Made by a program: the position numbers and the translations under genes | Assembly: GCA_976226885.1 (NCBI GenBank) | Contig: OZ320316.1 | Span: forward strand, 80,290,001-80,354,000 | DNA: 64,000 nucleotides | Direction of reading: 5' to 3' | Source of the DNA: Iphione sp. A-MEVVRFRX5 | Taxonomy: Eukaryota | Notes under the pieces: generated by a model | Told to the model about the DNA's origin: nothing | Database searches by the model: none | What the model saw: the letters and a program-made list of their open reading frames with translations, nothing else | Part shown: piece after piece, positions 227-42,800 of the stretch | How the letters are laid out: the number at the start of each line of letters is the position of its first letter | Numbering within the stretch: the first letter of the stretch is position 1

Positions 227-1380
227 TTTTTTTTTTTTAAACGTTTATTTCAACTGGAAAAAAATAGGCCATTGGCCTTACAAATCCAGTATCAGTCATC
301 TTTTACAAGTGCAACATTCACAGTACCATATTACAATAGTCTGATCTTACATCACAGTTTATCATATGCATGATGATAGAAAATACAGAACGATACAATG
401 TAGCAACATGTGATTTGATATGATGTTCTGATGAGATGAGATGTTGGTGAAATATTGCACATGGCCCAGAATTTGGTAAATTTCTCGGTTAGTTGTACGA
501 TTCCAGTTGTGCTTTATTTTTATGGTAAAGGTCAATTTTATATGTATCCAGGTGAGGGGGGAGCATGCTCCTATTTGCAGGTCATTTTCCGTCTTTAATC
601 TATCCACATTTTGAATGTTTTTAGGGGACCCTTTGGTTTTCTTGTTCCCACTTATTAAGTAGGAAACGTTTCAACTTCAATTTTGATGGTTTTTTCTTTA
701 CAGACAGGGGGAGGTAGTTCCAGACTCGGTTTGCGTTGTACCTTACAGATCTCTTCACAGATTCGAATTTTGGTCTAACTTGTCGTACTGATTCTGTCAC
801 GATTGAGCGAGTCCTGATTCTAGGAGTATTGTCATTGTTATTCACCATTGCCTGTACGATCTTACTGCATATAATCCAATAAAATATTCTTGCCTGATCT
901 CATACCGTAGAATATTTAACTTGTCATAGATAACTTCAATAGGAGAAGTCCAGTCTAAACTGCAACATCGTACTAGGCTGTCGAGTATCCTTGAGATGCA
1001 TTTAAAGCCCCTTGATGTTCTATTGTTCATTAATAAGAGCCCGTACTCAGAGTATGGAATAATGAAACCCTTTAAGGTTAGTTGGGCACTATTCCATGTC
1101 ATCATGTGGCGATTTCTCTTATACATCCTGACTTGCGGTTTCAGCTTGTTGATTATCCCTATCATATGTGATTCCATAGTTAAATGTTTATCTAATATTA
1201 CTCCCAGGTACCTCACACTGCTAGATTGTTTGATTTTTGTATCATCCTGGTATAGAGTTACGTTTGAATTTTTATACGCACTTCTCGAGTGTGTAAAAAA
1301 TATGAAGATGACACCAGCCCAGTTATCATGTCGGTCCAAAGGAAGTACTACATGTTCATTGAAGTATCTTTAAAAATAAT
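227..1380 (-). mobile_element. 5'-truncated, decayed CR1/L2-like non-LTR retrotransposon (RT C-terminal region, 3' UTR and poly(A) tail)
   Basis: ORF 842-1339 contains VRYLGVILDKHLTMESH (RT thumb motif). After a stop and frameshift, ORF 621-848 contains RSVRYNANRVWNYLPLSVK, the typical CR1/L2 C-terminal W-N-x-L-P motif. On the - strand, AATAAA (244-249) is followed by an A12 tract (T run 227-238). Confidence 0.85.
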
Positions 1381-2921: not shown

Positions 2922-3132
2922 GCGTCTTTTGGCAATTGGCCGATGTCCACTACGATGCCAATTACAGCGAGACAGGCTCACAATACAACTGTCATAACGT
3001 CGGCGCCGATGACAGCAAGGACAATGGCCGCTACGGTAACTACAGATGTGATGCTCCCTGGAGACTGGTGACCTCAGCCATCCAGGCCATGCAGCAGATA
3101 GAACCGGAGCCCGACTTTATCTTGTGGACGGG
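2922..3132 (+). CDS. SMPDL3: SMPDL3-like acid sphingomyelinase-like phosphodiesterase, first coding exon visible in the window (5' exon or exons not found)
   Basis: Acceptor tttttgtttcag|, donor GG|gtaagt. Translates (G)VFWQLADVHYD...NYRCDAPW...EPDFILWTG. Carries the DxH metal ligands and the WTG(D) motif of calcineurin-like phosphoesterases; G-x-F-W-x-x-x-D-x-H-x-D matches SMPDL3A/B rather than SMPD1. Phase 1 in, phase 2 out. Confidence 0.93.
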
Positions 3133-3185
3133 GTAAGTATGCTGTAAATGATATCGAGTTGATGTCACTATGTAGCCCGCCGTTT

Positions 3186-3235: not shown

Positions 3236-4025
3236 GCGTTGTTGTATAGTCCAGCATGTGGCGACAATGGTTGTCTATACATGTACATGCATTTTTTCCA
3301 TTTATTTACGTATTATTTGTACGATGATACAGTAAAGATGCAAGAACGGGGAGCGAACAATACTTGCTCTGCCTTGTCCCTGACTGTTCCTGCACCATTT
3401 ATAACGTTCTGTTGTGCACCCCGTTCACAAACAGACAAGGAAAGACGCATGTATGAATAATCAGCATTAGGCAAAAGGTGCAGATATAAGGGTGCACTAA
3501 ATGTAGATTCAGATCTGTCTTCCCTCAGCGCAAAATTCTGGCTTCATTGTTATTCAAACTACCAGAAAGGCATGCAGGGTTGCAATAAAATCTGTTGGTT
3601 CCATTAGCGAATATTTATGTGTACAGTGATCATCCTTCGCCTGACAAGGTGCCATTAAGTGGGCAGGGATGGAATAGGCTAATCAAGGTATGATATCGGG
3701 GAATGGACTAAAACAAATGCGGCGCATAATAATCTGGTGACGAGCTTCAAGCGTGTAGTGAGTTTGTATGTTCGTGCGAATGTACACTTACCTAGGAACT
3801 ATACATGATTCTGTTTGTTTTATCTAAACTTCACATGGCATTACTTTTCATATGTTTTGACAAAACAAGTCTTTTCTAAAGTATTTACTATCGTGCAAAA
3901 AAGTTGAAGAGAATTTCTGGGTCGGCACACAATGTGAAGATCTTCAAAGCTTGCCGAAGACACTCGGGCACACTGGAGCTAGTAGAAATTAGCCAAATAG
4001 TGAGAATTCCTCTCTGTTTTGGTAG

Positions 4026-4273
4026 AGATACCGTCCCGCACGTGCCCGACGACGAGCTCAGTGCCGCGAAGGTCTTCACCTTGGTCAGGAACGTAACTGA
4101 CCTGCTGCGCGACGTATTCCCCAACGTCACCATACTGCCGTCGCTAGGCAACCATGACTCATGGCCAGCCAATCAGGTGCCGCTCCCCACGGACAGCTAC
4201 TATACGGACATCTTGGAGTACAGCGGCTGGAGAGAGATGCTGGACGATACGACCAGTGCCACATTCACCAAAG
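4026..4273 (+). CDS. SMPDL3: SMPDL3-like phosphodiesterase, internal exon
   Basis: Acceptor ctctgttttggtag|, donor AAAG|gtacct. Completes WTG-D and translates DTVPHVP...LPSLGNHDSWPANQ...TFTKG, containing the GD and GNHD motifs. Phases (2 in, 1 out) fit both neighbours. Confidence 0.93.
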
Positions 4274-4955
4274 GTACCTCGTAGAGCGCCAGTCTTCCTG
4301 TCCTACATTTTTTTTCAGCAGAACCTTCTCTCTATAATCGACATATGCCACGGCTGCGAGTGAAAGAATATTACCTTTCACATCCTATTGAAAACGTTTC
4401 AAGTTCAACAAAGCCTGCTGTAAAAGAAAACGAGAACAATGGGGAAATATGGACGTGGTGGGAAGAAATTGAATTGCACATAACGTTTGCCTTTGCTCGA
4501 CAGGCATTTTGAAGTCTTAGCAGTGGCCCTTGATGATGTAACTGCTTAAGACACTAACAGACTCAAGAGCGCAGATTCACAGTACTTTGCATTGTGGCGG
4601 CTTGTATCTAGAAAGAACGTCTTATGGTCTATTCATGTGTATAATAGTGGAATCCTCTTTGACCAAGCATTGTGTGTAACCCAGGCGAAAGAAGGCTTCA
4701 TTTTTTCTTTCATAGTGCTTTCATAATGCCACTGATTTGATCAGCAGTAGAATATTGCCGACTCAAATTGTTGTCAGAGCAAATGTGTGTATTATACTTG
4801 CGTGAGCGGGAGCAGAAAAATGGGCCGGCGTTGACTTCAGGGGTTTGCGTGCCCCAAGTGTCATGTTTGCCCGTAAGGCTTGGCTCTTCCGCCCCCGGAC
4901 GCGATCAATCTGTAAGCTGTTGTACTGACACTCGACTTGGCCTCTCCCTCTCTAG

Positions 4956-5119
4956 GCGGCTACTACACCACCCTGCTACGACCAGGCCTGCGGCTCATCA
5001 ACCTTAACACCATCCTCTGGTATGAACAGAACCACTATGCCTTCAACAGACCCGACCCGGCCAACCAGCTGGCCTGGCTGGAGGAGCAGCTCGCCGCAGC
5101 CAGACTCGCCAAAGAAAAG
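4956..5119 (+). CDS. SMPDL3: SMPDL3-like phosphodiesterase, internal exon
   Basis: Acceptor cctctccctctctag|, donor AAG|gtagga. Translates GGYYTTLLRPGLRLINLNTILWY...DPANQLAWLEEQLAAARLAKEK, the ASM/SMPDL3 GxY...LNT...DPxxQxxWLExxL segment. Phase 1 in, phase 0 out. Confidence 0.93.
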
Positions 5120-8100
5120 GTAGGAGCAGTATGCGAGCACTGGCATTGTTGGCAGGGACCTGTGGACAGCGCTCCAGCTGCTCGCTGTATTGTCCCCATT
5201 TTTTGTTCTCGCCAAATTTAAATATTCGCGATCCTAGTGGTGGAATTGTTTAGGATTCAGCCCCACAACATTGTATGCATTGCACGTGTAAATGCTCTCC
5301 ACCGAATACAAAGAACACAAATTTCGAGATTTCTTTGGATCCTTTGAAAAGCAAGTTTTAAATTTTGCCGGCGAATTGAAATGTTTACATTTTGAAGAAG
5401 TGGCACGAGTGATCAAAATAGCGGTCTGTTAAAATCTTCAGATTGAGTGTTTTCCTATATACTTGTACTTTATATTCTATACATTGATTATGTATTAATG
5501 CACCTAGGATCTGAATAGCTAAAGAGTTGGGTTGGGTAAAATTCTACACAGTTTAGTAGGTTCATATCTGGCCGTAAGTTTGTTGCACGTTTGTCAGTTA
5601 ATGGAACAACATATCGAATCTACCACGGTCTGATATATGAGAGAGATGGATGCCTTTTCTCTAGTTTCGTTTTGTGGTTCAATGAATGTTTACCATCTCC
5701 TGTCAAAGGAAAACGCATTCACATCTAACAGTTCGACAACACATGGACGTATGTATGTGTGTACGGACTGAGTACCTAACTTGCAGTTTTACTTTTAGCC
5801 GTGCACCATTATTTTCAGGTACTGAAATGCGTAATTAGAGGAAACTACGATAGAATTGATGATGGTACATGTATAGTTTGGGAAAGTCGTACAAAAAGGG
5901 GGTTCTTAGTAAAGTAGAGTGTATGTATTTTCGCTTGCTCTAAAGGAATTCTTCTATGTTGGAAATCCAGAGCAGGAAAGAAACCATATTGCGTTTGTCT
6001 CCATTAATGAGTATTTCAGTTTTCTGGGTTTTTGCTCCAATTTCTGATGCATTGCGAATTTCAGACTGAGACATTTAATTGAAAAGGGACATTAGAAGCA
6101 GTGCAAGAGTCACACAAGATGACGTAATGAGGTACTTTGAAGTGGAAATATTAATACTGATAGATTTGTCTAGTTTGTCTGGAAGCTCGCTTAAATCCTC
6201 CACATAAGCGTACTGATTTGGGACCAAAAGGTCTTGAGCAATTTCCCCGATTGCCAGCAACATTCCTCAAAGTTAAGGCGCCATTTTTAATATTGGCTTT
6301 AAGAGTATAGGGAGGTACGGCAAGGGTGTGTTCCGTAATGAAGGTTTCCCGCCACTGTCAGGCGGCTGCGTGGGCCCCAAGCTTGGCAGCCCTCAGCAGC
6401 ACGGACGCCAGTAACCAGCTCTCGCCCACCTCGGAAGGAAATTGGATTAAAGACAAGAAAATGCCTAATGAGCGGTAGTGTTAATGTGATGAGGCGGGCC
6501 AGTAAAACCCCACCGATGGGCGGCATGTCGCCCTAATGAACCTGCTTCCATAGCTGTAGTATTACATTGCGCTTGGCTCGGCTCAGCATTGCTTGAGCAA
6601 ACTGTTCGGCATCGTATCTGGCTATATCATGGCGAAAGTGGTACGTGCCCGACGGACGTGATGCGATTTTTTTTGGCAAAGCAGGTCGGTTATAACAGAT
6701 GTTCTCCTGTAAAAGCCGTGCATTAAGAGAACCCGCGAGCCATGGATATGGATTTTAAATCATTATTTAAAAAAAAATTCCTCCAAAAACAACCCATCAT
6801 GAAAATATGCCTTTAGTAAGGCTAACAAATTTTATCGTTCGTGTTGGCGCTCATAACTATGTGCTTACAATTTAATGTAAAGCCACGGCTGATGGGTTCG
6901 CCCCACCACCTCGCGTTTGGAGGAAGAATTCATGATTGAGTTCACACAGGCATCAATCGTCACCATGGATTTTCGATAAATCATAAAACGAGAGCCCTTT
7001 TCATAGTATTCCGCTGAAGTGCCATCGAGGAAAAGGACAATATTGTATTGATTGTAAACAAAAACATTCATCACAAAAGTTGTTGCGATAAAGTGTCTGC
7101 CATCACACGGTTTTTCCATTTTCTGGCTGATCCTTGATGTGATTGTGTAAGCCATAGTGGAGGCAAACAAACCATTTGCATGTAATTAATTTTTTTTTGC
7201 AGTCTGGCCTTTCTTTCAGCGTTCCCTCGCATTATATTTGAAAATGTATGTAGATCAATCCATGCTGACAAATATCGTTTCCCGTCATTGTAGCTAGTTA
7301 TAGAGGACTCGATAGGTGTTGCAGCCCAAAGACTAGTAATTTTCCGTTCGTCGCGTTATTCTGGATTGTTATTTATCCTGAAATTTCATAGCATTAAAAT
7401 TGCGTCTGTCTTTTCGTGGTAGTTATGTCTGTGGGAAAAATACCTGTCGAGCTCTGGTACTGCCAGGCCATAGATGCTGGTGAATTATACATTATTTACT
7501 AGACATCGTTACCTCAACAGCATATATGCTGCACTGAACACGGACAAGCATACAATACTGTGTCCATTTGCAACATGCGTGGGAGCGGCATCGCAACCAC
7601 CTGCCGCGTGGAGCTCGATAATAAACGAAATTGGCATCTGTCATTGTTAGCATTGTTAGTACATTTGCTCTCTTATATATATATAATTTTTATATTTAAA
7701 TCTCGTTTGGCCCCAGACTTGTTCCTTTTTTTTCACGTCGACCAGATTTCAGAGATCACCTACCTCCGACATACATAGTCATATTTGGATATCATCGGAC
7801 AGTGAATATTCAGTGATAAATATGCAGCATTCATCAGCTTCCTTTTCTGTAATGCAAGCCTTACAGTAGGTAACTTCTAGCTAGGTAACCTGCAGTTGAC
7901 ATTTCGATAGTCACCACTACAATACCGTGTTTTCTCCCTTTAGATCATTATAGGTAATCCTGCAATGAAAATGAGTCATTTACATTCTTATAAATATTAC
8001 AATATATCAGGTTTCTTTCAGCCGCCGGTGATGGGTCATTGTTTATTACAGGCACATAAGACCATTGTGTCCTTAAGGCCGGTCATCCTTGCCCATTTCT

Positions 8101-23100: not shown

Positions 23101-26100
23101 ATTAAATGATATTTGTTGCTATTTTACAACTAGTTCGGTGTTGATATAAAGGGTGGTGCGGCTTGATTAAACAATTTCACGGTTTCCAAGTCGAGACAAT
23201 TAAGTTTGCGAGTGACCAGATATTTGAGTAGCATCTCACTCCATTGGCGTCTTCGCATACGAGCAAGGCGATACGGCATCCAGGCTACACGTTTCATTTG
23301 CCTACCTAGCAAACATTTAAACAGCCAGTCTGTCGAAGCTGGAATCATATCAAGATATGAGGGTTAAAAGGGTTGCACAGTCTACAACACTGCCTAGTAC
23401 AAACACAGGCATTTTCAGCTTACCAGTTGTCTGATCAGCAGCAATCCAATGTTCTTGCCCCGCTTAAAGCAAGTGGAATGTGTTCCAGAACCACCCCATC
23501 AGTGTTTATCCATATGTCAATAGCACTTGAGCACTTCATTTGTTCATTTCTCACACGTTGGTGAGGAAACAGCATGGAGGCGGGACGTGGAGTACACCCG
23601 CACATAACCTAGTGTGGCGTTGTGGTTAGAACCAGCCTAATGGTGTTTTAATGGCCTTTGCATCTTGAAGTGTTTACCTTCAAACATTTATGCGCATAAT
23701 CGTGCTGAAGATTTATTTACCCTGCGGAGAATTCAAAATGATTTCAACCGGTCGTTTTTCCCCGAAAGCGGCCTTTGAATGAATAATTCTCTAATACAAC
23801 CGGGAGGCCTTCCATGATCTTCAAGGAAGTTCGGAAAGAAAACCCAGCTTTTCATTGGAAACTGAGTATTAGAGATTAATTCATTTTGAATGAAGTGCCC
23901 TTCAAGACAGTGCAACGGCCCATCCAAGCAGCATGTGCCGGGCATACACAATAGAAGCCACTATTCCAACGAGCACGGCCCGCAACAGACCTCGGGCGCA
24001 ATTCCTTCAGCATCAAAGACCGCGGCAATCGACTGCGGTTCCCGGGGGGGCTTCAGCCCGTCGTCTGCCAACACAAAAAACGCATTTCCCGCCGCGCGTG
24101 CTGTATGGTTCAGTAATGGGTTTTGTGGTAGGTGCCCTGCCCCCTGATGAATGCACTACGCCCCGGAATTCCTCCGTTTGTTGTCCAGCATAATGGCGAC
24201 GTGGTGGACAGGTGCCGGAGGCGGCAGCCAGTTCGGCTGCGGGTGACGAGCGCCTCCCGCCGCTGCAGCTCGCCTCGGCCAGGAGTTTAAATATTTACCC
24301 ATCGGATGTGTCCCGGATAGAAACGTTGCTATTTCATTTTTAATCATCCGCTACACGTTTTATTGTTGATAACCGCCTCTGAAATTGATAGGCTTGGTGA
24401 TAAGATGGATACGGTCATTTCTTAAAAGGAAATGCTCCATCCGTGGCTACCGCATGCAGTTCGACCAATACCATTTCAGGTGGAAGCAGGCATTGTCTAA
24501 GGGGCATGTGTCAGAACCCCTCGACTGATGGTGGCTGGCAGATACTGGGAGCCAAGTCATCAAGATATGATCATGACTACAGCGCAGAGGCGCTGGCGGC
24601 TCGGGCCGGGCACCGCCTTACCCACAGATCGATGGTGGCTGTGTCCAATCCGATACCAATTCATCTCCTGTCAGTAAACCGTCTGTTTACTGGGCGTGTG
24701 ATGGCCACATCGATTGACGCGCGTGAGCGTATTTCACGAGCGCCAGCAGCCGGCTCTGACCAGCTCTTTATTCATGGACGCTAATGAGAGGCACTTTAAA
24801 ATCTCCAGCTGGGCCTGAGGTGTAATCCGTCAAAGTGACTTTTCTTATGAGCGCGTCTTCAAAATGTGAGTAGCGTCAAGGCGTCAGGGCTGGGGACAGA
24901 CAAGGTGGGATCTTAGGGGTTTAACGAGTGGATAGAGGGATGTGCGAGAGAGAAAGAGGGAGCTTGGTTGGAACGAGCAAGCCACTCCACAGGCACTGAC
25001 TTATTATCCCACTTTTCAAATCCCAATCAGGACTTCAAGGAAATTTCGGACAAAAATCGCCCGAATCCATACGGAAACGATTAGGGCCGACGTTGAAAGT
25101 AGAAACCAATAGGCGGCTCGGAGTCGTAATTAAAGACCAGATCAGACGGCTGGCGAGAATGGGGCGTCTTTTTTCGATGCTTTCCAGCCTGCTGATTAAT
25201 GGAATGCCAGCCTCTGTTTACGTCACGACGGTTCCCAGCGCCACCGCTCTTAAAACGGGTGGTCCGCGAACGTTAAGCAGTGGTTTAAAAAATATCGCGC
25301 ACGTTTGAATATTAAGAAAATCTTGGCGTGGATGAAGGATACAAATTGGATTCGCACGTGAAATATTTGCCTCCTTGAAGCATTGATTCTGTTTTACAGG
25401 AGCTTAGGGATTTATCATTATCTTGGTTTCTTTTTTTGTTATTGTTGATCGGATTTGGATCTAAATCCAGAAATACTGGCTGCTTGTTCCTTTTATTGTC
25501 GCACCCCAGGTTTTACGCGGACGGCCCTGCGTGAAAGCTCAAACATGCAGAAGCAATATCTCTCGTATTATCATGAATCACGGCAGAATTTAATACACTC
25601 TGCATTGTGCAAGTGTGTGTGCTTGTGTGTGTGCATGTGTCTGTGTGTGGGCATAATAAATATCTATGAAAAAGTGATGCTTTGACGTTCCAAGAGTTAT
25701 GGTGCCAATATCCACTGGATGACATATTCAAACAGGGAAGTGGATCTCACGCCAGAACAGAAGCCATGCTCTGGCAGAATTGCTAATGCACTTTAAGTAT
25801 GATAATACCGGCTTATATATTCCGCGCCTTCTCGGAGCAGACGAGAGTAACCCTCACAGGAGCAGCTCGCAATGGTTCACAGGATGACCTCAGCACAAGT
25901 ACGTTTATTGACCCTTATTATACAAAGCCATCAACATTCATTCTTTCGGCATACATCCTGACGATGCACTGACGGTAAATAGACGCATCCATAGCCTGTG
26001 GACGAGGTTTTAGTATCGGTTAGGGCATCGATTCCGCATTTCTATGTAATAATGAATAATCTTGTGTCGCGCTTGGGAATGGATGCTGGTACCGGCTTTG

Positions 26101-27198: not shown

Positions 27199-27230
<32 letters not shown>
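27182..27230. repeat. (TAA)n microsatellite
   Basis: Near-perfect TAA/AAT run seen directly, with one interruption. Confidence 0.95.
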
Positions 27231-27232
<2 letters not shown>

Positions 27233-28373
27233 TCTTATCCCTTAGGTAGTAATACATGGTAGCTTCAGTTTTTAAAGTAGAATATCAAAAAAGTACAGGT
27301 CTATTCATATTCACTAAATTAAATTTGTTTCTGTGGGTGCACCTGACATCTCATATTTGTCTGTGATTGCTGAGTAACAAGCGATGTAGTGCTTTGTTGT
27401 AAGAATCATAACTACGCATGTCACTGCTGGATAGATTGTTCCCATTACGGACATTTTGGCAGTATACATACATTGCGGTGTTTTAAGGGGATACACAAAT
27501 TAGAACGCTCGTGTTGTGGTCTGTTGATACCATTGTCCTGAAGGAATTATCATCTTGCAGCATGGGAAATATGTGGTAGCAACATATGCACCTTTATCTC
27601 CACACTTTACGAAAAGCTTTATATTTTTATCTGTGACGATGAGGTTTTCGGTAAAGAGGGCCACGTCTCAGGCTTTTCGCATAGCAGTGGATCGCATATG
27701 ATGATTTCTAGTCATTCCTTGCTTTGCATTCGTACAAATTATACTATATGGGTATACCCATGCATTACTTGTAGATATACTCCATTATAATTCCATCATT
27801 GCAAGAGACGAAACTATTGCAGTGTGAAAGTAAAATGAGAAATAGTGGTTCGTGTATTCAGTGAATTCGGCATTCCGATTTGTGCGTCCATATGTTACTC
27901 TATGGATACCTAAAGGAGTGATTCTCTGTACATGAGTGGTTTTCTCTCTAGCTACCTTGTATAGTGGATCTTTACAACTTTAAGCCTCTTTATTTATTAT
28001 AGCCCTACTTTGGGTTATGTGCTCAAAGATTTACGTTATCTGTATGGCTTATCATATGGGGTACCCGTGATATTAAACATATAGGCCTACAAGTGATAGC
28101 GTCCAAAATTTTAGACCACGGCGGAGTTAGCAGGAAAGGAAATATATGTCCATATGTATTTCTCTTGTCCATTTGCTGGTTCTTGAAAGGATACTTCACA
28201 TAGCAGCATACTCGGGACCTATCGATGTGAGTGGGATAAGTCGCACTAGGAGCTTATCTCATTACACAGTCGGCTCCCAAGAGACGGCGCTTAAAACCAC
28301 TCGCAGCGTTGAAGAGCCCCTGGCGGAAAGAGAAGGAATCTTTTCATACCTGACTAGACTGTCCTCGTAGAAA

Positions 28374-28418: not shown

Positions 28419-28641
28419 GAAGTTAGTTGGCATGCAGTCCGAAAGAAGCGCGTTTGTCCCCAGCTGGTATAGGAAAATACCTTTAACATTATAAACTTTT
28501 GTTTTTTGTAACAGCTACTGGTCCTCTAGTGGATTGGTGTGAAAATGGTTTCGTTATATGGTCTATTAACGCCGCGCCTGTGATTTGTAGACACTACGTT
28601 ATTACCTGTTTCCTTTTTTTCGATCGCCTTCGACCCGGCAG

Positions 28642-28831
28642 GTCCTGCTCTCCGGTCACATCCCGCCGGGCATGCTGGCCCGGGTGGCGCACTTCTCCTG
28701 GTACGTGCCGCAGTTCAACAGCCGCCTGGTGGCGCTGCTGCAGCAGTACCATGACGTCATCACGGCGTTCATCACGGGTCACGAGCACACTGATGGCTTC
28801 CACATAATCAACGGCAACGAGGGAAATCAAT
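28642..28831 (+). CDS. SMPDL3: SMPDL3-like phosphodiesterase, internal exon
   Basis: Acceptor tcgacccggcag|, donor T|gtacgt. Translates VLLSGHIPPGMLARVAHFSWYVPQFNSRLVALLQQYHDVITAFITGHEHTDGFHIINGNEGNQ, with the GHxPPG and GHxHxD metal-binding motifs. Phase 0 in, phase 1 out. Confidence 0.92.
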
Positions 28832-29251
28832 GTACGTGTCCTAGAATTGTTAGACTTAAAGGCCACATCGCCATGATCACTTGAAACAGCTGCGCGTTTA
28901 TAATTGTATTCCGTGTATAATAATTTATAATTGTATTCATACATAATGTGGCAAAGGTATGTTTTCGTCGTGCTGAGCCATCGCCATGCCATCTGGCTTT
29001 GAATGATATGTCAACGTTATTACAATGCATATGAAGTATTTGATGAATAAGCAGTCTTGAGAAGATTATGTTGAAATTAAATTAGTGCTATGTCGTTTGA
29101 AGATTGATTATCCATTGTTCCTACTTACCGTAGCTAAAATTGAAAAAAAACGAAACCCGTTGCCTAAGATCCTACGTCATAACGAGAAGTATGCCACTAT
29201 ACATGTTGATCTCCCTTTCCTGTGAAACCGAATTCTTTTCCTGATGTATAG

Positions 29252-30000
29252 ATTCCCCACTGGTCCCTGTACTCATGGCGCCTGCGGTGACGCCCTGGCG
29301 CAGCACCATCCCAGGCATGGGCGCCAATAATCCAGGCATCCGGCTTTACACCTATGACCGGCGCACCGGAACGCCCTTGGACTTCCGCCAGTTCTTCCTC
29401 AACCTGACTGCGGCCAACGGCGCTGCGGCCGCCGACTGGCAGCTGGAGTACCGCGCTAGCGAAGCGTACAACCTGAGCGCCCTGACGGCGCGCGCTCTGC
29501 ATGGGCTGGCCTCCAGCTTCCTCCGAGCTGACGACGAGTTCTTCAAGCGCTACTACGCCTACAACACCGTCTCCTATGACCTCCGCTCGGACTGCTCCAG
29601 CGAGTGCAAGCAGTCGCACATCTGCGCCATCCTCTTCGTCGACTACGACCAGTACCAGAAGTGCATGCACAAGTACGAGCGCGAGCACCTCGTTCCCTAC
29701 CGCGTCCACCACGCGGACGGCGCCAACGGCTCGGAGGCGTCCCTGGCGCCGGCGGTGGTGGCCACTGGGCACCGAGCCAATGTGACGCATCTCTTCCACG
29801 GACACGCCCCGCACCCGTACCCGCCGGGCCCGCGGCCGGCGCCGCAGTACCACAAGGCCGGCTATATGCACTACGTCATCTACGGGCTGGTGTCGCTGGT
29901 CGTCGTACTCTTTCTCATCATCACTCTCCTCTGCTGCTGTTTCCGACCCAACAATCGAGTTGTGTACTTCACCCAGCCTAGGTATGTCCTTGTCAGCTAG
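29252..30000 (+). CDS. SMPDL3: SMPDL3-like phosphodiesterase, terminal coding exon: end of catalytic domain, C-terminal disulfide subdomain, His-rich stalk, TM helix and tail
   Basis: Acceptor ttttcctgatgtatag|; the phase-1 join gives YSPLVPVLMAPAVTPW...NNPGIRLYTYD...DWQLEY...DCSSECKQSHICAI...YQKCM, matching the SMPDL3 C-terminal motifs. Hydrophobic YVIYGLVSLVVVLFLIITLLCCCF follows at 29872-29943; TAG at 29998-30000. A strong donor AG|gtatgt at 29981/29982 means the last few codons could be intronic. Confidence 0.9.
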
Positions 30001-30774
30001 ACTGGCAATGCCGGGCCCAATGCTGAGTGAGGTAGGCCACTCTTCAGGGCGATCGACCGGTAGAACTGCAGGTCGCTCTCATACTGAAGGGGCACTTACT
30101 TACAGGTACATCCTGACCGAGGTATTATGTCTCATGATATTCTTTTGCCTTTGTCGTAAATTTATCTATTATTTATCCTAGATATGTTCAACAAACACTT
30201 AGCCGCCTAATTTATAAACCCCTCTTTTTAGTCATAGCTGGCACTCACTTTACTGCCAACCCTCTACTACGACCGCTACTCCTATTTTGGAGGAAGCAAG
30301 TGGACATTATGTTACATGATCAGCATAATGTAATGAGGATACCATTGAAGAAAGATGACATTTTTTAAAGAACCCAGAGGTTTCCTAACAGGTGGAGATG
30401 TCCGTGCGCCTGTGTGTCCATCTTCCATGCATGTTCATGGAGCTGTTTATACAGAGTTTAGAGGAAAACATGGATCAACAGGGATCAGTGCAAACACCAG
30501 CAGATGTATTCATGTATTCTAACCCTATGCCGCCGGTTCTCTGGGGTGTGATGTGTGTATTAAGATTGGGAGGTACTGTTCTGTCACATGACATTCAGGA
30601 CAGCACCGCGACATAGTTTCTGTCATGCACTCGATAAGCAATGTTAATTGCATTATTTTAAAGTAAGTAAAAGTCAATTCCAAATTAAAAGGGTCAAGAG
30701 TCATGAATTATGCTTTATAATGAAATTATAAAAATCATAGGACTAAAACTTGACAGATTTTCATGATATGTCAG

Positions 30775-38206: not shown

Positions 38207-39877
38207 TCACGTAGAGGTGGTGGGTACGGGAGGTTCGGCCGCCATGGGTAAACTCTCCCACAGAGGGGATATACACGGTGCTTCCAGCGGAGGCGTTTTG
38301 CCCAGTGTCCCATTCGCTACGTGCCAAGCGTAGAGTTTCCTGGTTGCTAGTGGCGTGTGGCCGTGCTTCATGGCATGGATCTGACCGCCCAAGTGGCCGA
38401 TACCAATGCCGGAGCTATCACTGCGGGCCGAGTCGCCGCGTTCTCGACCACCACCAGCCTCGATGAACGTTGCCGACCGGTGGTTGATGGACGGAAGGGA
38501 ACTTTGTCGGTATGGGCTCGGATGGATGCGTGGTAACGGCGATGCAGGCGAGGGCGACGGGGGTGGCAGCATCGTCACCGTCTCGTCCGTCGTCACGCCA
38601 CCGGAAGCGTCGGACCGCGCCAGAAGTGATCGTCGATTGGTTCGTGTCGCACTGCGAAGCCTTCGATGGTCTGTACCTGCGGACGGTCCCGCGGCAATAG
38701 GCAGTCTGTTCTGGAGTGGGCCACCATAGGACATCGAACCAGAGGCATTTCTGATATTGACATTGTCATAGGAGGCAGACTTGGGCTTGTAGAGAACACC
38801 AGGTTTGAGATCATCCATGGATGCTGATTTAACTCGCTGTAGTGACGTCGTACTCTGACTTGTAAATCTCTGCAGTCGCCGGGCTTGAAGTCGACTCTGC
38901 AGCGACCCGGCACCACTTTGGTAATGTTCCCCTGATTTGCAGGTGAGAACTGCAGACTGGATTTTTCTGTTGGCCTGCCGTTGTGCGTGAGCCTCTGGCT
39001 TCTCATCAATAACATCACCACTCCCCGATGCAAGCTGTCGTTTCGAGGTTTGCATATGCTTACCATGAATTTTCTTGGTTGTAGTATTTTCGCATGGCAC
39101 TATTACTTTGGAATTACCCTCACTAGTGTCTCTTTTATTCTTAATACTCTCCCGATTATTTCCTTGATAAGCTCCCGAGTCCTTGCTTACATTCTCCTTC
39201 GAAACCCTGTCGTTTTCTCCTTGCTCCTTTTCGGAACTCGGCTGTTCTCCTCCTCGATTTGAGGCGAATGCGCCAGACTGACCCCGCTTTCGGGGAGCAG
39301 GCTTTGGGGCCGTCGGGCTTGGCGTGCCCTGGATGCAAAGACCCCTACCCAGTGTCTTCATGGCTGGCGTTCCGAGGCGTCCAATATTATGGAACCCTTT
39401 GGTTAAGGATCCGAACGTCGAGAGACCGGGCGGATCTGCCGGACGCGAGCACGAGGCGGAGGTGGCCGGGCGCTGGGCTGGGGAGAGCCTGGAGGGAGCT
39501 GCTGGAGCGAACCCCTCGATGGACATGTCAGAGGTGTCCCCAACCAAGGTCTCAGGGTCGCACGGCACCAACTCCTCCAGGCGGGGACCGTAGTCAATGG
39601 GTATGAAGATAACTCGTACGAGCAGCTCATCCTCCGGGAAAGTCACCCTCTTACCTGATTTGCTCTCCCGCCGAATAAAAGAGAGTGAGTCATCGGTAAC
39701 CACCGAGAGGTTGTCCTCCGACGGGGGCGGTTGCTTCCAATTCTCCTCACTAGAAGAAGAAGCCTCGACAGTTTCAGTCTCATCCGAAATGTTGTCGTCA
39801 TCATGTGTAGGAGTTATTGGTGGAGTTGGGTCCAAATCATCAGACAGTAATTCGCCCATATCTTCATACAACTCCAT
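38207..39877 (-). CDS. Uncharacterised 556-aa Ser/Pro/Arg-rich, largely disordered protein with a putative PP1-docking RVxF motif; single coding exon as seen
   Basis: Longest ORF in the window, uninterrupted. The ORF track starts at GTG 39889, but the first ATG (39877) is in a good context (gccATGG); TGA at 38207-38209. Acidic N-terminus, KRVTFPEDELLVRVIFIP at residues 76-93, and a more ordered C-terminal segment RKLYAWHVANGTLGKTPPLEAPCISPLW. No family recognised; additional 5' exons are possible. Confidence 0.75.
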   Translation of the reverse strand: MELYEDMGELLSDDLDPTPPITPTHDDDNISDETETVEASSSSEENWKQPPPSEDNLSVVTDDSLSFIRRESKSGKRVTFPEDELLVRVIFIPIDYGPRLEELVPCDPETLVGDTSDMSIEGFAPAAPSRLSPAQRPATSASCSRPADPPGLSTFGSLTKGFHNIGRLGTPAMKTLGRGLCIQGTPSPTAPKPAPRKRGQSGAFASNRGGEQPSSEKEQGENDRVSKENVSKDSGAYQGNNRESIKNKRDTSEGNSKVIVPCENTTTKKIHGKHMQTSKRQLASGSGDVIDEKPEAHAQRQANRKIQSAVLTCKSGEHYQSGAGSLQSRLQARRLQRFTSQSTTSLQRVKSASMDDLKPGVLYKPKSASYDNVNIRNASGSMSYGGPLQNRLPIAAGPSAGTDHRRLRSATRTNRRSLLARSDASGGVTTDETVTMLPPPSPSPASPLPRIHPSPYRQSSLPSINHRSATFIEAGGGRERGDSARSDSSGIGIGHLGGQIHAMKHGHTPLATRKLYAWHVANGTLGKTPPLEAPCISPLWESLPMAAEPPVPTTST

Positions 39878-42800
39878 GGCAAGAAACACATTACCTTACA
39901 TCCTTCAGGTGTCACTATTGCTAGCAGAGGGGCTTCATAAGTGTAGTGTATATGAGCCGTTGTTTTCACACATGCACCTGTTGTTAGTTAATGTTTGGAG
40001 TCCAGTGAGTATATGTGGCCTGCAACGGTTTACGTTCGACTGCGCTCTATCGGATCACACTGGCCGCTTCAGTAAGGCTATGGGAAACTTAAAACCAGGT
40101 CAGACTTCAATATCCTTAACGTGCGGACGTGTGGATCCGATTCCTTCGCCAACAGCTCAATCGTGTCATAATACTGGGTAACCGGTATCAGCATTCCACC
40201 CATACTACGGTACCTCGCCCCACACTCCAAGCAACCTTTGATGCGCACCTACTGGAAGATCACATCAAGTGGTGTACTTTTTTCAAGTGTAGCAATATCA
40301 GTGTAGTCGAGCGAAGACCCAACATATATCTCGAGCCTAATTCGTAGTTGGATTGCAGTACATGTACTGAGTAGTGGGATCTGTGTTCTGGTAGTGGCGG
40401 CGGAGGTGGTCCTGGCGCAGCTGACGGGCGTGTGAAGTCTGCCACTTTGGCCTGCTAGCCTATTGGCATGTCAACGACAGTGTGGGCCTTCAGGGACCGC
40501 CCTGCCACCTCTACAATGTTCCTCCTGCCTGGTTGTGGCCGATAGCTCGCGGCGGCAGTCTGCTGTAGGAGCGAAGAGGACGTGTGTGTAGCGGGCCTTC
40601 CTAAATTCCTACCACCAACCAGCAAACATCAGTAGATGACCGCTGGGTCTTGATCCCAGCAGCCGTGCCCATTACCTACCGTTTGATCCGCACCTGATCC
40701 CGTCTTGATCCCTCAAATAGAGGGTTTGGGAAGTCGGTGGAGGGGCGCAATCGACGCAGGAGAGGGCTGCATCGGGGTCTGTAAGTGTCCTCGAGGGTAG
40801 TGGAGCATGGCCAGGAATGATGGTTGCAAGATCCTCCCAGGCTGACCCTGCCGGTCATTATTGTAATCAGTAGTGCCCATTCACGGCTATTAGGCGGCAT
40901 CCAAACAAACGGTAGCCAGACCTCTTCGTGGCTTTTAGGGCCACCACGAACTTGTTGGCATAAGGCATTCCCCGGTCATGCCTCCACATAATGCTTTACG
41001 TGGCGCACACAAAGCCGCGGCTTGGCCGCTGATTGGGAGCATAGCAGGCAGATTGCGGCCTAGCCAGACTTAAGTGGCAGGAGTTTATTATGATTCAAGC
41101 CCCAGTAATAAACCGTATCTAATGACTAACCATTTTAGGCATAGGCCATCCAATACCGGAGAGATATCACTTTATTGCTCGCATGTCGAGAATGTGACAT
41201 ACTTCGTACAATATTATGCACGGCCTCAACGATGGGTATTTGCGTTCCTCCTTAGAAGAGTACATTGTACTCACCAACCCACAAATCACGTATAACTGAT
41301 GATATCATATGGAAAGCCTGCTTGATGGGAGGCAGTGTTGGTTTGCAGGTGTATAGGGTCTTCTCACTGTCCCACTGAAAAAAAAACAATAAAACAATGC
41401 GTGAATTAAAAAGTACATGTGTATAGTATTTCTAAATGAGAGTACATGCATTGTGAAACAAATAGACTCTAAAATGCTAAATCGGTGAAAATTATAAAGA
41501 TGTAATCTTAAAGAAAATCAACACATTAATTAAGGCTGGCGAAAGATACACATATCATAGTCCCGTTTTCTTTTTATTTAAGTGAGTGAGTGGCAGAAAG
41601 GGCCGATTGGCACTTTATGTACATGTACGTGGTATCATTACGTAAGAATATAGGTAAATCGGTACGTTATTGTTTGCAAAGAATTAACGAGAAGCTGTGA
41701 ACAATAGACTTTCATACCCATGACGTAGGTTCTCTCATTATTGGTTAATACATTATACTCGTCGGAGGGGTCTGACCATTGTTTGAACAAGTCCGTTTCT
41801 TTGTCCCTTGTAGCCAGCAGGAAGAGTGCCTGTGACTTTATTCCGACTGCAACCATGTACAGCCACAAACTGACCCTATAGCACTGCCTCTTACAGGTAG
41901 GCAACTTACACGACTTCGGATGGATGCCAAATATGTCGAACTAATCTCTGTTAATTCCATCCGTATATATTGAATGTTGTCTTAACGTGCGAGACCTGGG
42001 TACGGCCCGTGGATTGTGAAGTGTTACTCTTCTCCCCAGTGCAAATATAACAATAATATAGCCGAAAGGAGGATGCCGATGTAGACATTGCGGGTTCAGT
42101 CTGACTATAGTGCAAGCATTTCCTACTCACATAGCCAAAGCTTGAACAGGGTAAGTACGTGTGTGTTTCTTCTCAACTCTATCCACTTATTTCTCCACTT
42201 AGGAACACAGTGCTAATTGCTCTCAGACCCCTGAAAAAGTTGTCATCGAAGGGTCTCAACAAAGGGGGTCTACAAGAAAGTTGCATTAGGTTTCCTTCCT
42301 GTTTTTTGCTGTGTACCGCGGATACCGCTTGTGGCACCTCTGGTTATCAACTAATGTACAGAGATAGTTATAGTCATGTGTATATGAATTGAATACATTT
42401 GTGTTTTTTCCAGCTGTAACTATGGCTGCGTGCAGTTTCATCAATATAGACTGGTTTGACCTGATGGATAAAGAGTGTATGTCATCGTCTTTTTTACAAG
42501 TGGTGCATATATTAATTTTCTACAGAAAACTGTGTTATCTTACCTTACTATGACAAAGAATTTGGCTGTTTTGTTCCTGATTTGTACATTTGAAGCTTTA
42601 AATAACACTCACACATCTCTACGTATATTGAAGCTATAATTACACTGTCCAAGACTAACAGAGCTTTGGCTGCTTACAGTCTCGGTTTTCCTTCTGTGCT
42701 GAAGACCTATGATTTCTGTCTTTGAGCTGATCGACAGATACTCCTTCCGAACGAATGTGTAAAACAACGAAGGGATACTTGGTTCTATGAAACTACTCCT

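What the first reader, a model, noticed from the sequence alone, without database searches (positions are those of the whole stretch)
29662..30000. SMPDL3 phosphodiesterase with a type-I membrane topology (TM helix, CCC and cytosolic tail) instead of the secreted or GPI form
Seen: after the conserved C-terminal disulfide subdomain (C..C....ICAI...C) the frame continues through a stalk into a hydrophobic helix of about 24 residues (YVIYGLVSLVVVLFLIITLLCCCF) and an 18-residue tail, RPNNRVVYFTQPRYVLVS. All metal-ligand motifs (DxH, GD, GNH, GHxPP, GHxH) are intact. Established: mammalian SMPDL3A is secreted or lysosomal and hydrolyses nucleotides (reported to include cGAMP), SMPDL3B is GPI-anchored and dampens TLR signalling, and GPI signals end in the hydrophobic segment with no polar tail. 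Inference: this is an active, transmembrane, possibly palmitoylated (CCC) ecto- or luminal phosphodiesterase with a Tyr-based sorting motif (YVLV, YxxPhi). That would be a membrane-tethered nucleotide or cyclic-dinucleotide clearing enzyme of a kind I do not know from vertebrates.
Basis: partly seen in the sequence, partly recalled or inferred. Interest (0 to 1): 0.75.

Follow-up and report, generated by a model that had tools for sequence, protein, structure and literature searches.

The report
Membrane-spanning SMPDL3-like phosphodiesterase with sorting tail
The window holds the last exon of an intact animal gene for an SMPDL3-like zinc phosphodiesterase held in the membrane by a transmembrane helix and a short, very conserved cytosolic tail, a form shared by molluscs, annelids, ribbon worms, a barnacle and a sponge, so it is real but not a one-off.

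Summary
29252-30000 is the terminal exon of a gene of at least six exons. After the ASMase_C subdomain it encodes a His/Pro-rich stalk, a 24-residue hydrophobic helix ending in CCC, an 18-residue polar tail and a stop codon.

- **Enzyme:** exons 2-6 splice in frame with canonical GT-AG sites, and all metal-ligand motifs are kept.
- **Not a GPI signal:** against three orthologous contigs the tail has 0-2 amino-acid changes despite near-saturated synonymous change. The helix and tail are more constrained than the enzyme's own C-terminal subdomain.
- **GPI-like paralogues:** three in the same genome end in a bare hydrophobic segment.
- **Sorting motif:** 47 of 50 distinct TM-tailed relatives carry YxxPhi in the tail, usually [RK]YxxPhi about 13 residues from the membrane.
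- **Separate clade:** with tails removed, the TM-tailed bilaterian proteins form a supported clade (98/97). It excludes vertebrate SMPDL3A and SMPDL3B, amphioxus and Owenia's GPI-like copies.

The form is common in invertebrates and is auto-named "SMPDL3b". A 2026 paper notes a C-terminal TM segment in a fluke homologue.

Substrate, palmitoylation and trafficking are inferred. Exon 1 and transcripts of this species were not found.

The parts
461..551 (+). Candidate exon 1 (Met plus a weak signal-peptide-like segment, phase-1 donor CAG|GTGAGG that would restore the conserved Gly before VFWQ). Uncertain; a second candidate lies about 1.1-1.2 kb upstream of the window start.
   Evidence: Scan for ATG-to-phase-1-donor ORFs in the window and 20 kb upstream. 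No transcript or orthologue evidence.
2922..3132 (+). Exon 2: start of the metallophosphoesterase domain (VFWQLADVHYD ... ILWTG), with the DxH metal ligands.
   Evidence: Acceptor AG at 2920-2921, donor GTAAGT at 3133. tblastn with ten full-length homologues, E 1e-13 to 1e-20.
4026..4273 (+). Exon 3: completes WTGD and carries GNHD.
   Evidence: AG at 4024-4025, GT at 4274. tblastn E down to 8e-22. Motif scan.
4956..5119 (+). Exon 4 (GGYYTT ... NLNTILWY ... AKEK), followed by an intron of about 23.5 kb.
   Evidence: AG at 4954-4955, GT at 5120. tblastn.
28642..28831 (+). Exon 5: GHIPPG and GHEHTD metal-ligand motifs.
   Evidence: AG at 28640-28641, GTACGT at 28832. tblastn. Orthologous exon is 81% identical in L001 and L011.
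29252..30000 (+). Exon 6, the terminal coding exon, with the stop at 29998-30000.
   Evidence: AG at 29250-29251. Spliced exons 2-6 give 520 residues with no stop. They align collinearly in one alignment to the intron-free 525-aa ORF of L012.
29260..29679 (+). ASMase_C helical subdomain with conserved cysteines.
   Evidence: Pfam PF19272 3.2e-37. PDB SMPDL3B/3A matches. pLDDT above 90.
29665..29871 (+). Stalk of 69 residues, His/Pro-rich, with 2 N-glycosylation sequons (NGS, NVT).
   Evidence: Predicted disordered. A long His-rich stalk is typical of TM-tailed forms (median 42 aa; 57% have at least 3 His) and not of GPI-like forms (median 13 aa; 2%).
29872..29943 (+). Transmembrane helix of 24 residues; CCC at 29932-29940 on the cytosolic edge.
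   Evidence: Hydropathy 3.2. AF2 helix with pLDDT up to 98. pN 0.04-0.09 against orthologues. Cys in the last 6 helix residues in 37 of 50 relatives.
29944..29997 (+). Cytosolic tail of 18 residues; PRYVLV (YxxPhi at 29983-29994) one residue before the C-terminus.
   Evidence: Tail identical in two orthologues and 17/18 in a third, with pS of 0.6-1.1. YxxPhi in 47 of 50 relatives versus 15 expected.

Best explanation
The window encodes a single-pass type I membrane protein of the SMPDL3 branch of the acid-sphingomyelinase-like, two-metal phosphoesterases. Shown here: the gene is intact over exons 2-6 and keeps every metal-ligand motif. The catalytic and ASMase_C domains are followed in the same exon by a flexible His-rich stalk, one transmembrane helix with three cysteines at its cytosolic end, and an 18-residue tail. 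The helix and tail are translated and are under stronger purifying selection than the enzyme's own C-terminal subdomain. The protein belongs to a supported clade of TM-tailed invertebrate proteins that is separate from vertebrate SMPDL3A and SMPDL3B and from the GPI-like paralogues. Inferred: a signal peptide in an exon 1 I could not fix places the glycosylated enzyme domain outside the cell or in the lumen of endosomes and lysosomes. The conserved [RK]YxxPhi near the C-terminus is a tyrosine-based signal read by clathrin adaptors. The enzyme would then be endocytosed from the surface and delivered to endo-lysosomes, as lysosomal acid phosphatase is. The juxtamembrane cysteines are candidate palmitoylation sites. 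The substrate is unknown: nucleotides as for SMPDL3A, or a membrane phosphodiester.
For: Gene model: canonical splice sites and an in-frame 520-residue product. All five exons match ten full-length homologues. One collinear alignment covers residues 3-519 against the intron-free 525-aa ORF on the 1,894-nt contig L012. Family: ASMase_C at 3.2e-37; PDB SMPDL3B at 6e-31, SMPDL3A at 7e-28, ASM only 8e-10; all metal motifs align with bird SMPDL3A and 3B. Topology: hydropathy 3.2, basic residues after the helix, 7 N-x-S/T sequons all on the N-terminal side; AF2 gives a single helix, a disordered stalk and a disordered tail. Selection: tail pN 0, 0 and 0.05 at pS 0.60-1.12; helix pN 0.04-0.09; ASMase_C pN 0.20-0.31; stalk pN 0.29-0.33. 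Motif: YxxPhi in 47 of 50 distinct relatives (shuffled mean 15, maximum 26 in 2000 shuffles); [RK]YxxPhi in 33 (mean 3.7, maximum 11); median 13 residues from the helix. Contrast: same-genome paralogues on C1 (two) and C2 end in 19-24 hydrophobic residues with no tail. Clade: 10 rows, 9 of them strictly TM-tailed, UFBoot 98 / SH-aLRT 97, on a tree built without stalk, helix or tail.
Against: No transcript evidence exists for this species; no RNA or DNA run was listed. Exon 1 and therefore the signal peptide are not identified; two candidates remain. TM and GPI predictors were not available, so the call rests on hydropathy, charge, AF2 and conservation. The 50 relatives are phylogenetically related, so the motif counts are not independent events. 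YxxPhi is a short motif, and adaptor binding, palmitoylation, localisation and activity are all untested. The Tyr lies 13 residues from the membrane, a spacing more typical of endocytic signals than of direct lysosomal signals (recalled knowledge, not tested).
Confidence: 0.75

Rival explanations
1. The hydrophobic segment is a GPI-attachment signal, as in mammalian SMPDL3B. The helix and tail would be cleaved off in the ER.
For: The closest solved relative by sequence is GPI-anchored SMPDL3B. GPI-like C-termini dominate the wider family (46 of the first set, 76 of the second).
Against: An 18-residue polar, basic tail follows the helix. The tail has no amino-acid change in two orthologues at near-saturated synonymous divergence, which is not expected of a discarded signal. 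The stalk is long (69 aa against a median of 13 in GPI-like forms). Same-genome paralogues show what a GPI-like end looks like here. The gene sits in a clade apart from the GPI-like forms.
Confidence: 0.04
2. The helix and tail are genomic but are not in the main product. The dominant mRNA would end or splice before 29872, giving a secreted enzyme.
For: No RNA data exist for this species. The nearest poly(A)-like hexamers are 0.7-2.9 kb downstream, so the 3' end is undefined.
Against: Domain, stalk, helix and tail are one uninterrupted exon. The helix and tail are the most constrained part of it. Intron-free contigs of 1.5-2.1 kb from other species carry the catalytic domain and TM tail in one ORF (P0010, P0210, P0211, P0214, P0218, P0221, the Argopecten cluster).
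Confidence: 0.07
3. It is a type I membrane enzyme, but the conserved tail is not an AP-type endocytic or lysosomal signal. It could bind another partner (a PTB-type adaptor at the FxQPxY stretch, which resembles FxNPxY), direct polarised sorting or ER export, or signal. The very conserved helix could mediate oligomerisation or a partner contact.
For: Conservation extends beyond YxxPhi in close orthologues: the whole VVYFTQPRYVLVS stretch and the helix are nearly invariant. That is more than an AP signal needs. Pro or Arg before the Tyr is widely kept.
Against: Across distant members only the [RK]YxxPhi core survives while its flanks vary. That is the pattern expected for a minimal YxxPhi signal.
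Confidence: 0.14

Closest known systems
SMPDL3B (vertebrate, GPI-anchored)
   Same: Same domain pair (metallophosphoesterase plus ASMase_C). It is the best PDB match to the last exon (9k2e, 6e-31). All metal motifs are shared. Both are membrane-attached with the enzyme outside. Databases auto-name the TM-tailed proteins 'SMPDL3b'.
   Different: The anchor is a transmembrane helix plus a conserved cytosolic tail, not a GPI signal. The stalk is long and His-rich. Bird SMPDL3B groups with amphioxus and GPI-like invertebrate forms, outside the TM clade, so the name is not an orthology statement.
SMPDL3A (vertebrate, secreted or lysosomal nucleotide and cGAMP phosphodiesterase)
   Same: Same fold and metal site. 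About 37% identity to bird SMPDL3A over 410 aligned residues.
   Different: SMPDL3A has no hydrophobic C-terminus (P0106). It lies outside the TM clade. Its cGAMP activity (Hou et al. 2023, cited in PMC13268100) was not tested for this clade.
Clonorchis sinensis SMPDL3A with a C-terminal TM segment (PMC12841337, 2026)
   Same: An invertebrate SMPDL3 with a predicted C-terminal transmembrane helix, proposed to hold the enzyme on a membrane.
   Different: There the hydrophobic segment is annotated as residues 470-498 of a 498-residue protein, so little or no tail is described. No conserved tail motif, cysteine cluster or pan-invertebrate clade is reported. I did not have its sequence to place it on the tree.
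Lysosomal acid phosphatase (ACP2/LAP), by mechanism only
   Same: From recalled knowledge: a soluble-type hydrolase made as a type I membrane precursor. Its short tail carries a Pro-x-Tyr-x-x-Val signal that drives clathrin-mediated endocytosis and delivery to lysosomes. The PRYVLV tail here has the same layout.
   Different: Unrelated fold and family. The analogy is inference and was not tested.

Membership tests
SMPDL3 / acid-sphingomyelinase-like phosphodiesterases | Calcineurin-like metallophosphoesterase domain with the two-metal ligand motifs (DxH, GD, GNH, GHxPP-type His, GHxH) | tested here: met
   ADVHYD, WTGD, GNHD, GHIPPG and GHEHTD are all present and aligned with bird SMPDL3A/3B and invertebrate homologues. 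Single exons are too short to reach Pfam Metallophos alone, but the collinear homologue P0010 carries PF00149 plus PF19272.
SMPDL3 / acid-sphingomyelinase-like phosphodiesterases | ASMase_C helical C-terminal subdomain with conserved cysteines | tested here: met
   PF19272 at 3.2e-37, profile positions 3-141 of 143. Cysteines are nearly invariant in alignment A2. The AF2 model is confident.
SMPDL3 (as opposed to SMPD1/ASM) | No saposin domain or Pro-rich linker before the catalytic domain | tested here: inconclusive
   Exon 1 was not identified. In all full-length clade members the catalytic domain starts 22-38 residues after the Met, leaving room only for a signal peptide. PDB matches to ASM are much weaker (8e-10).
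SMPDL3B | GPI anchor: C-terminal hydrophobic signal with no cytosolic tail | tested here: not met
   An 18-residue conserved basic tail follows the helix.
SMPDL3B | Orthology with vertebrate SMPDL3B | tested here: not met
   Bird SMPDL3B groups with amphioxus, outside the TM clade, which has 98/97 support. Deeper branching is poorly resolved and the tree is unrooted.
SMPDL3A | Soluble, secreted or lysosomal, with no membrane anchor | tested here: not met
   The window protein has a TM helix. Bird SMPDL3A (P0106) has no hydrophobic end and lies outside the clade.
Type I membrane proteins with a tyrosine-based (YxxPhi) sorting signal | N-terminal signal peptide, one TM helix, basic residues on the cytosolic flank | tested here: inconclusive
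   The helix, the basic flank and luminal sequons are present. The signal peptide of this gene was not found; it is present in orthologues.
Type I membrane proteins with a tyrosine-based (YxxPhi) sorting signal | YxxPhi in the cytosolic tail at least about 7 residues from the membrane, and binding to the AP mu subunit | not testable with these tools
   The motif is present 13 residues from the helix and is conserved in 47 of 50 relatives. Adaptor binding needs an experiment.

The most novel reading that the evidence does not exclude
The TM-tailed clade is an invertebrate surface or endosomal hydrolase for extracellular immune nucleotides (cGAMP-like cyclic dinucleotides or ATP). It would be recycled by its Tyr signal and play the role that membrane-bound ENPP1/ENPP3 and secreted SMPDL3A play in vertebrates. 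It would have been lost in the deuterostome lineages sampled here.
Probability: 0.1. Interest if true: 0.75.

Novelty: new variant of a known kind. Interest (0 to 1): 0.4.

Why it matters
The SMPDL3 enzymes studied so far are secreted or lysosomal (3A) or GPI-anchored (3B). This gene is one member of a third branch that appears old, is transmembrane, and has barely been described. Its helix and cytosolic tail are more conserved than its enzyme domain, which points to a specific trafficking or partner interaction.

The branch is hidden in databases under the name "SMPDL3b". Recognising it would correct functional inferences for molluscs, annelids and other invertebrates. It also gives a defined target for asking what these enzymes hydrolyse at invertebrate cell surfaces or in endosomes. 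For this single window the gene is an ordinary member of that branch.

Tried and rejected
- **RNA evidence:** two searches for public runs (kind rna on 28600-30300, kind any on 29252-30100) listed nothing. Read laying could therefore not be used.
- **Exon 1:** a scan of the window and 20 kb upstream gave two plausible candidates and no way to choose. The ORF at 1062-1227 was rejected because it lies antisense to a longer ORF that looks like a retroelement remnant.
- **Pfam on single upstream exons:** no hits, because the pieces are too short.
- **Domain-only tree:** 152 rows on 136 columns was too poorly resolved to place the same-genome paralogues. I rely on the full-length tree.
- **Organism identity:** the closest homologues (71%, 63% and 57% identity in the last exon, and P0010 at 51% over the aligned full-length columns) are unnamed metagenome or Logan contigs. 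From the named clade members I infer a spiralian-like invertebrate, unproven.
- **Literature:** five searches found only the Clonorchis paper for TM-bearing SMPDL3. Two of the searches were too loosely set to be informative.
- **Artefacts excluded:** one mammalian 'TM' call (P0302) and several insect or myriapod long C-termini look like gene-model read-through and were not counted.
- **Spliced protein:** it has no reference, so it was analysed only in scripts and not sent to the database tools.
- **Human sequence:** a human SMPDL3B entry (P0316) appeared in the hit list. It was left out of all scripts and not pursued.

Full report
**1. What is in the sequence**

The stretch 29662-30000 lies inside one open frame. 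The frame runs from the splice acceptor AG at 29250-29251 to TAG at 29998-30000.

The first 143 residues of this exon match the Pfam model ASMase_C at 3.2e-37. The best solved relatives are SMPDL3B (9k2e, 6e-31) and SMPDL3A (7e-28). Acid sphingomyelinase itself scores only 8e-10.

After the last conserved cysteine (29662-29664) come four parts:
- a 69-residue stalk (29665-29871) with nine His and two N-glycosylation sequons;
- a 24-residue hydrophobic segment (29872-29943);
- three cysteines at the end of that segment (29932-29940);
- the tail RPNNRVVYFTQPRYVLVS (29944-29997).

**2. The gene**

Motif scans and tblastn with ten full-length homologues place four upstream exons on the + strand:

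| Exon | Coordinates | Content |
|---|---|---|
| 2 | 2922-3132 | DxH; start of WTGD |
| 3 | 4026-4273 | completes WTGD; GNHD |
| 4 | 4956-5119 | NLNTILWY region |
| 5 | 28642-28831 | GHIPPG, GHEHTD |

- All introns are GT-AG, and the intron between exons 4 and 5 is about 23.5 kb.
- Spliced with exon 6, these exons give 520 residues with no stop.
- That product aligns in a single collinear alignment (residues 3-519) to the uninterrupted 525-aa ORF of a 1,894-nt Logan contig, L012. This validates the model end to end.
- A more compact orthologous locus (L002) shows the same five exons in the same order.
- All metal-ligand motifs align with bird SMPDL3A and SMPDL3B.
- Exon 1 (Met and signal peptide, joined in phase 1) could not be fixed. 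Two candidates remain, one at 461-551 and one about 1.1-1.2 kb upstream of the window start. Full-length relatives all begin with a typical signal peptide 22-38 residues before the catalytic domain.

**3. Transmembrane anchor or GPI signal**

Four lines of evidence point to a retained helix and tail.

(a) Form. The helix is followed by a polar tail that starts with Arg. All seven N-x-S/T sequons lie on the N-terminal side.

(b) Structure prediction. AlphaFold2 on an alignment of 37 sequences gives a confident ASMase_C fold, a disordered stalk (pLDDT 51-60), one helix at exon residues 206-230 (block pLDDT 84-98) and a disordered tail.

(c) Selection. I compared codons with three orthologous contigs whose last exons are 71%, 63% and 57% identical:

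| Region | pN | pS |
|---|---|---|
| Tail | 0, 0 and 0.05 | 0.60-1.12 |
| Helix | 0.04-0.09 | 0.47-1.03 |
| ASMase_C subdomain | 0.20-0.31 | 0.62-0.94 |
| Stalk | 0.29-0.33 | 0.60-0.79 |

A signal that is cut off in the ER would not be the most constrained part of the protein.

(d) Internal contrast. The same genome has three further SMPDL3-like last exons, two in tandem on C1 and one on C2. They end in 19-24 hydrophobic residues with no tail, which is the GPI-like pattern.

TM and GPI predictors were not available, so this conclusion rests on the evidence above.

**4. How common the form is**

An exhaustive HMMER search with the last exon found 911 relatives. I classified the best 150 representatives plus their cluster members by what follows the ASMase_C domain.

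- About 50 distinct sequences have a strongly hydrophobic helix, a basic flank and a tail of 8-45 residues.
- 46 are GPI-like and 33 have no hydrophobic end.

Named TM-tailed members are:
- annelids: Owenia;
- a nemertean: Lineus;
- bivalves: Argopecten, Mya, Mytilus, Saccostrea, Sinanodonta;
- gastropods: Haliotis, Patella, Lottia, Gigantopelta;
- cephalopods: Octopus, Sepia;
- a barnacle: Pollicipes;
- a sponge: Oscarella.

Capitella (annelid, partial sequence) has a hydrophobic segment plus a 23-residue tail, but it failed my strict criteria and I left it as ambiguous.

In this sample the vertebrate, amphioxus, hemichordate, sea-urchin and coral entries were GPI-like or lacked a clear hydrophobic end. 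One mammalian 'TM' call looks like a read-through gene model.

Several TM-tailed proteins sit as complete ORFs on intron-free contigs of 1.5-2.1 kb. These are most simply read as mRNA-derived, so the TM-tailed isoform is expressed in other species.

**5. Conserved tail features**

Among the 50 distinct TM-tailed sequences:
- 47 have YxxPhi in the tail. Shuffling each tail gives a mean of 15 and a maximum of 26 in 2000 trials.
- 33 have [RK]YxxPhi, against a shuffled mean of 3.7 and a maximum of 11.
- The Tyr lies a median of 13 residues from the helix, with a median of 4 residues after the motif.
- 37 have Cys within the last six helix residues.

These sequences are related, so the counts show retention of the motif and not independent origins.

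TM-tailed forms also share a long His-rich stalk: median 42 residues, 57% with at least three His next to the membrane. GPI-like forms have a median of 13 residues and 2%.

**6. Phylogeny**

I built a tree from 42 full-length proteins cut at the end of ASMase_C, so that stalk, helix and tail could not influence it (IQ-TREE, LG+C20 PMSF).

- The window protein pairs with P0010 (100/99).
- Both lie in a clade of ten rows with UFBoot 98 and SH-aLRT 97.
- Nine of the ten are strictly TM-tailed: Owenia, Lineus, Pollicipes, Haliotis, Mya, Argopecten, Octopus, P0010 and the window.
- Bird SMPDL3B groups with amphioxus. Owenia's GPI-like copies, sea urchin and bird SMPDL3A all lie outside the TM clade.
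- The sponge TM form sits next to the clade with weaker support (88/89).

The tree is unrooted, so it cannot say whether the tail was gained or lost.

The reading I favour is an old paralogue, at least protostome-wide, distinct from both vertebrate genes. The database name "SMPDL3b" is therefore a similarity label only.

**7. Mechanism**

Shown: an intact two-metal phosphoesterase is tethered by a real helix with a conserved tail.

Inferred from established cell biology (recalled, not tested here):
- YxxPhi signals in short tails of type I proteins bind the mu subunits of clathrin adaptors and drive endocytosis and endo-lysosomal delivery.
- Lysosomal acid phosphatase uses a Pro-x-Tyr-x-x-Val tail in this way, and PRYVLV has the same layout.
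- Cysteines at the cytosolic end of a helix are common palmitoylation sites.

In close orthologues the whole helix and the VVYFTQPRYVLVS stretch are nearly invariant. This leaves room for a further partner. The FxQPxY stretch resembles FxNPxY but is not canonical.

The substrate is open. SMPDL3A hydrolyses nucleotides and reportedly cGAMP (Hou et al. 2023, as cited in PMC13268100). Nothing here tests that for this clade.

**8. Prior knowledge and novelty**

Within the paper library, the only description of a TM-bearing SMPDL3 is the 2026 Clonorchis study. It reports a hydrophobic C-terminal helix at residues 470-498 of 498 and proposes membrane positioning. It does not mention a tail motif or a wider clade.

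The first half is met: the form is common. The second is barely met: it is scarcely described.

I rate the finding a new variant of a known kind. It is real and well supported at the sequence level, and of moderate interest.

**9. Limits**

- No RNA run of this species was listed, so expression and transcript ends of this gene are unknown.
- The organism is not identified.
- The spliced protein could be analysed only in scripts.
- A human SMPDL3B entry that appeared in a hit list (P0316) was excluded and not pursued.

Noticed in passing
G000:C1:35993289-35993753 (L004), G000:C1:36010465-36010914 (L005), G000:C2:53660088-53660695 (L006/L007): Three further SMPDL3-like last exons in the same genome: two in tandem about 17 kb apart on C1, and one split by an intron on C2. 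All end in a short hydrophobic segment with no tail (GPI-like). The C1 pair is 71% identical to each other and very divergent from the window gene.
   Followed up: partly
window 29665-29871 and homologues: TM-tailed SMPDL3 proteins share a long His-rich juxtamembrane stalk (runs such as HHHH or HxH before a P-x-Y-M motif) that GPI-like forms lack. It might bind metal or sense pH. Unexplained.
   Followed up: partly
window 5120-28641: The intron between exons 4 and 5 is about 23.5 kb, whereas the orthologous gene on contig L002 spans exons 2-6 in about 6.3 kb. The intron content was not analysed beyond an ORF listing.
   Followed up: no
window 842-1339 (-): A 165-aa ORF with a stretch (RYLGVILDKHL...) that recalls the C-terminal part of non-LTR retrotransposon reverse transcriptases. 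Pfam gave no hit at E below 0.01. It overlaps, in antisense, a hydrophobic + strand ORF that I rejected as an exon 1 candidate.
   Followed up: partly
window 38207-39889 (-): A 560-aa open frame rich in Ser, Pro and Gly with no Pfam family. Another first-stage note (s1-325217) flags a PP1-docking-like segment at 39581-39652. Not examined here.
   Followed up: no
window 25590-25700 and about 27200-27245: Simple repeats: a TG/CA-type microsatellite (translated as CVCLCVCMCLCV) and an AAT/AAC-type run (translated as a poly-Asn stretch) inside the large intron.
   Followed up: no
P0009 (Owenia fusiformis, 615 aa): This annotated GPI-like SMPDL3 protein matches the ASMase_C query twice (residues about 299-458 and 437-587). 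This suggests a tandem C-domain duplication or a fused gene model.
   Followed up: no
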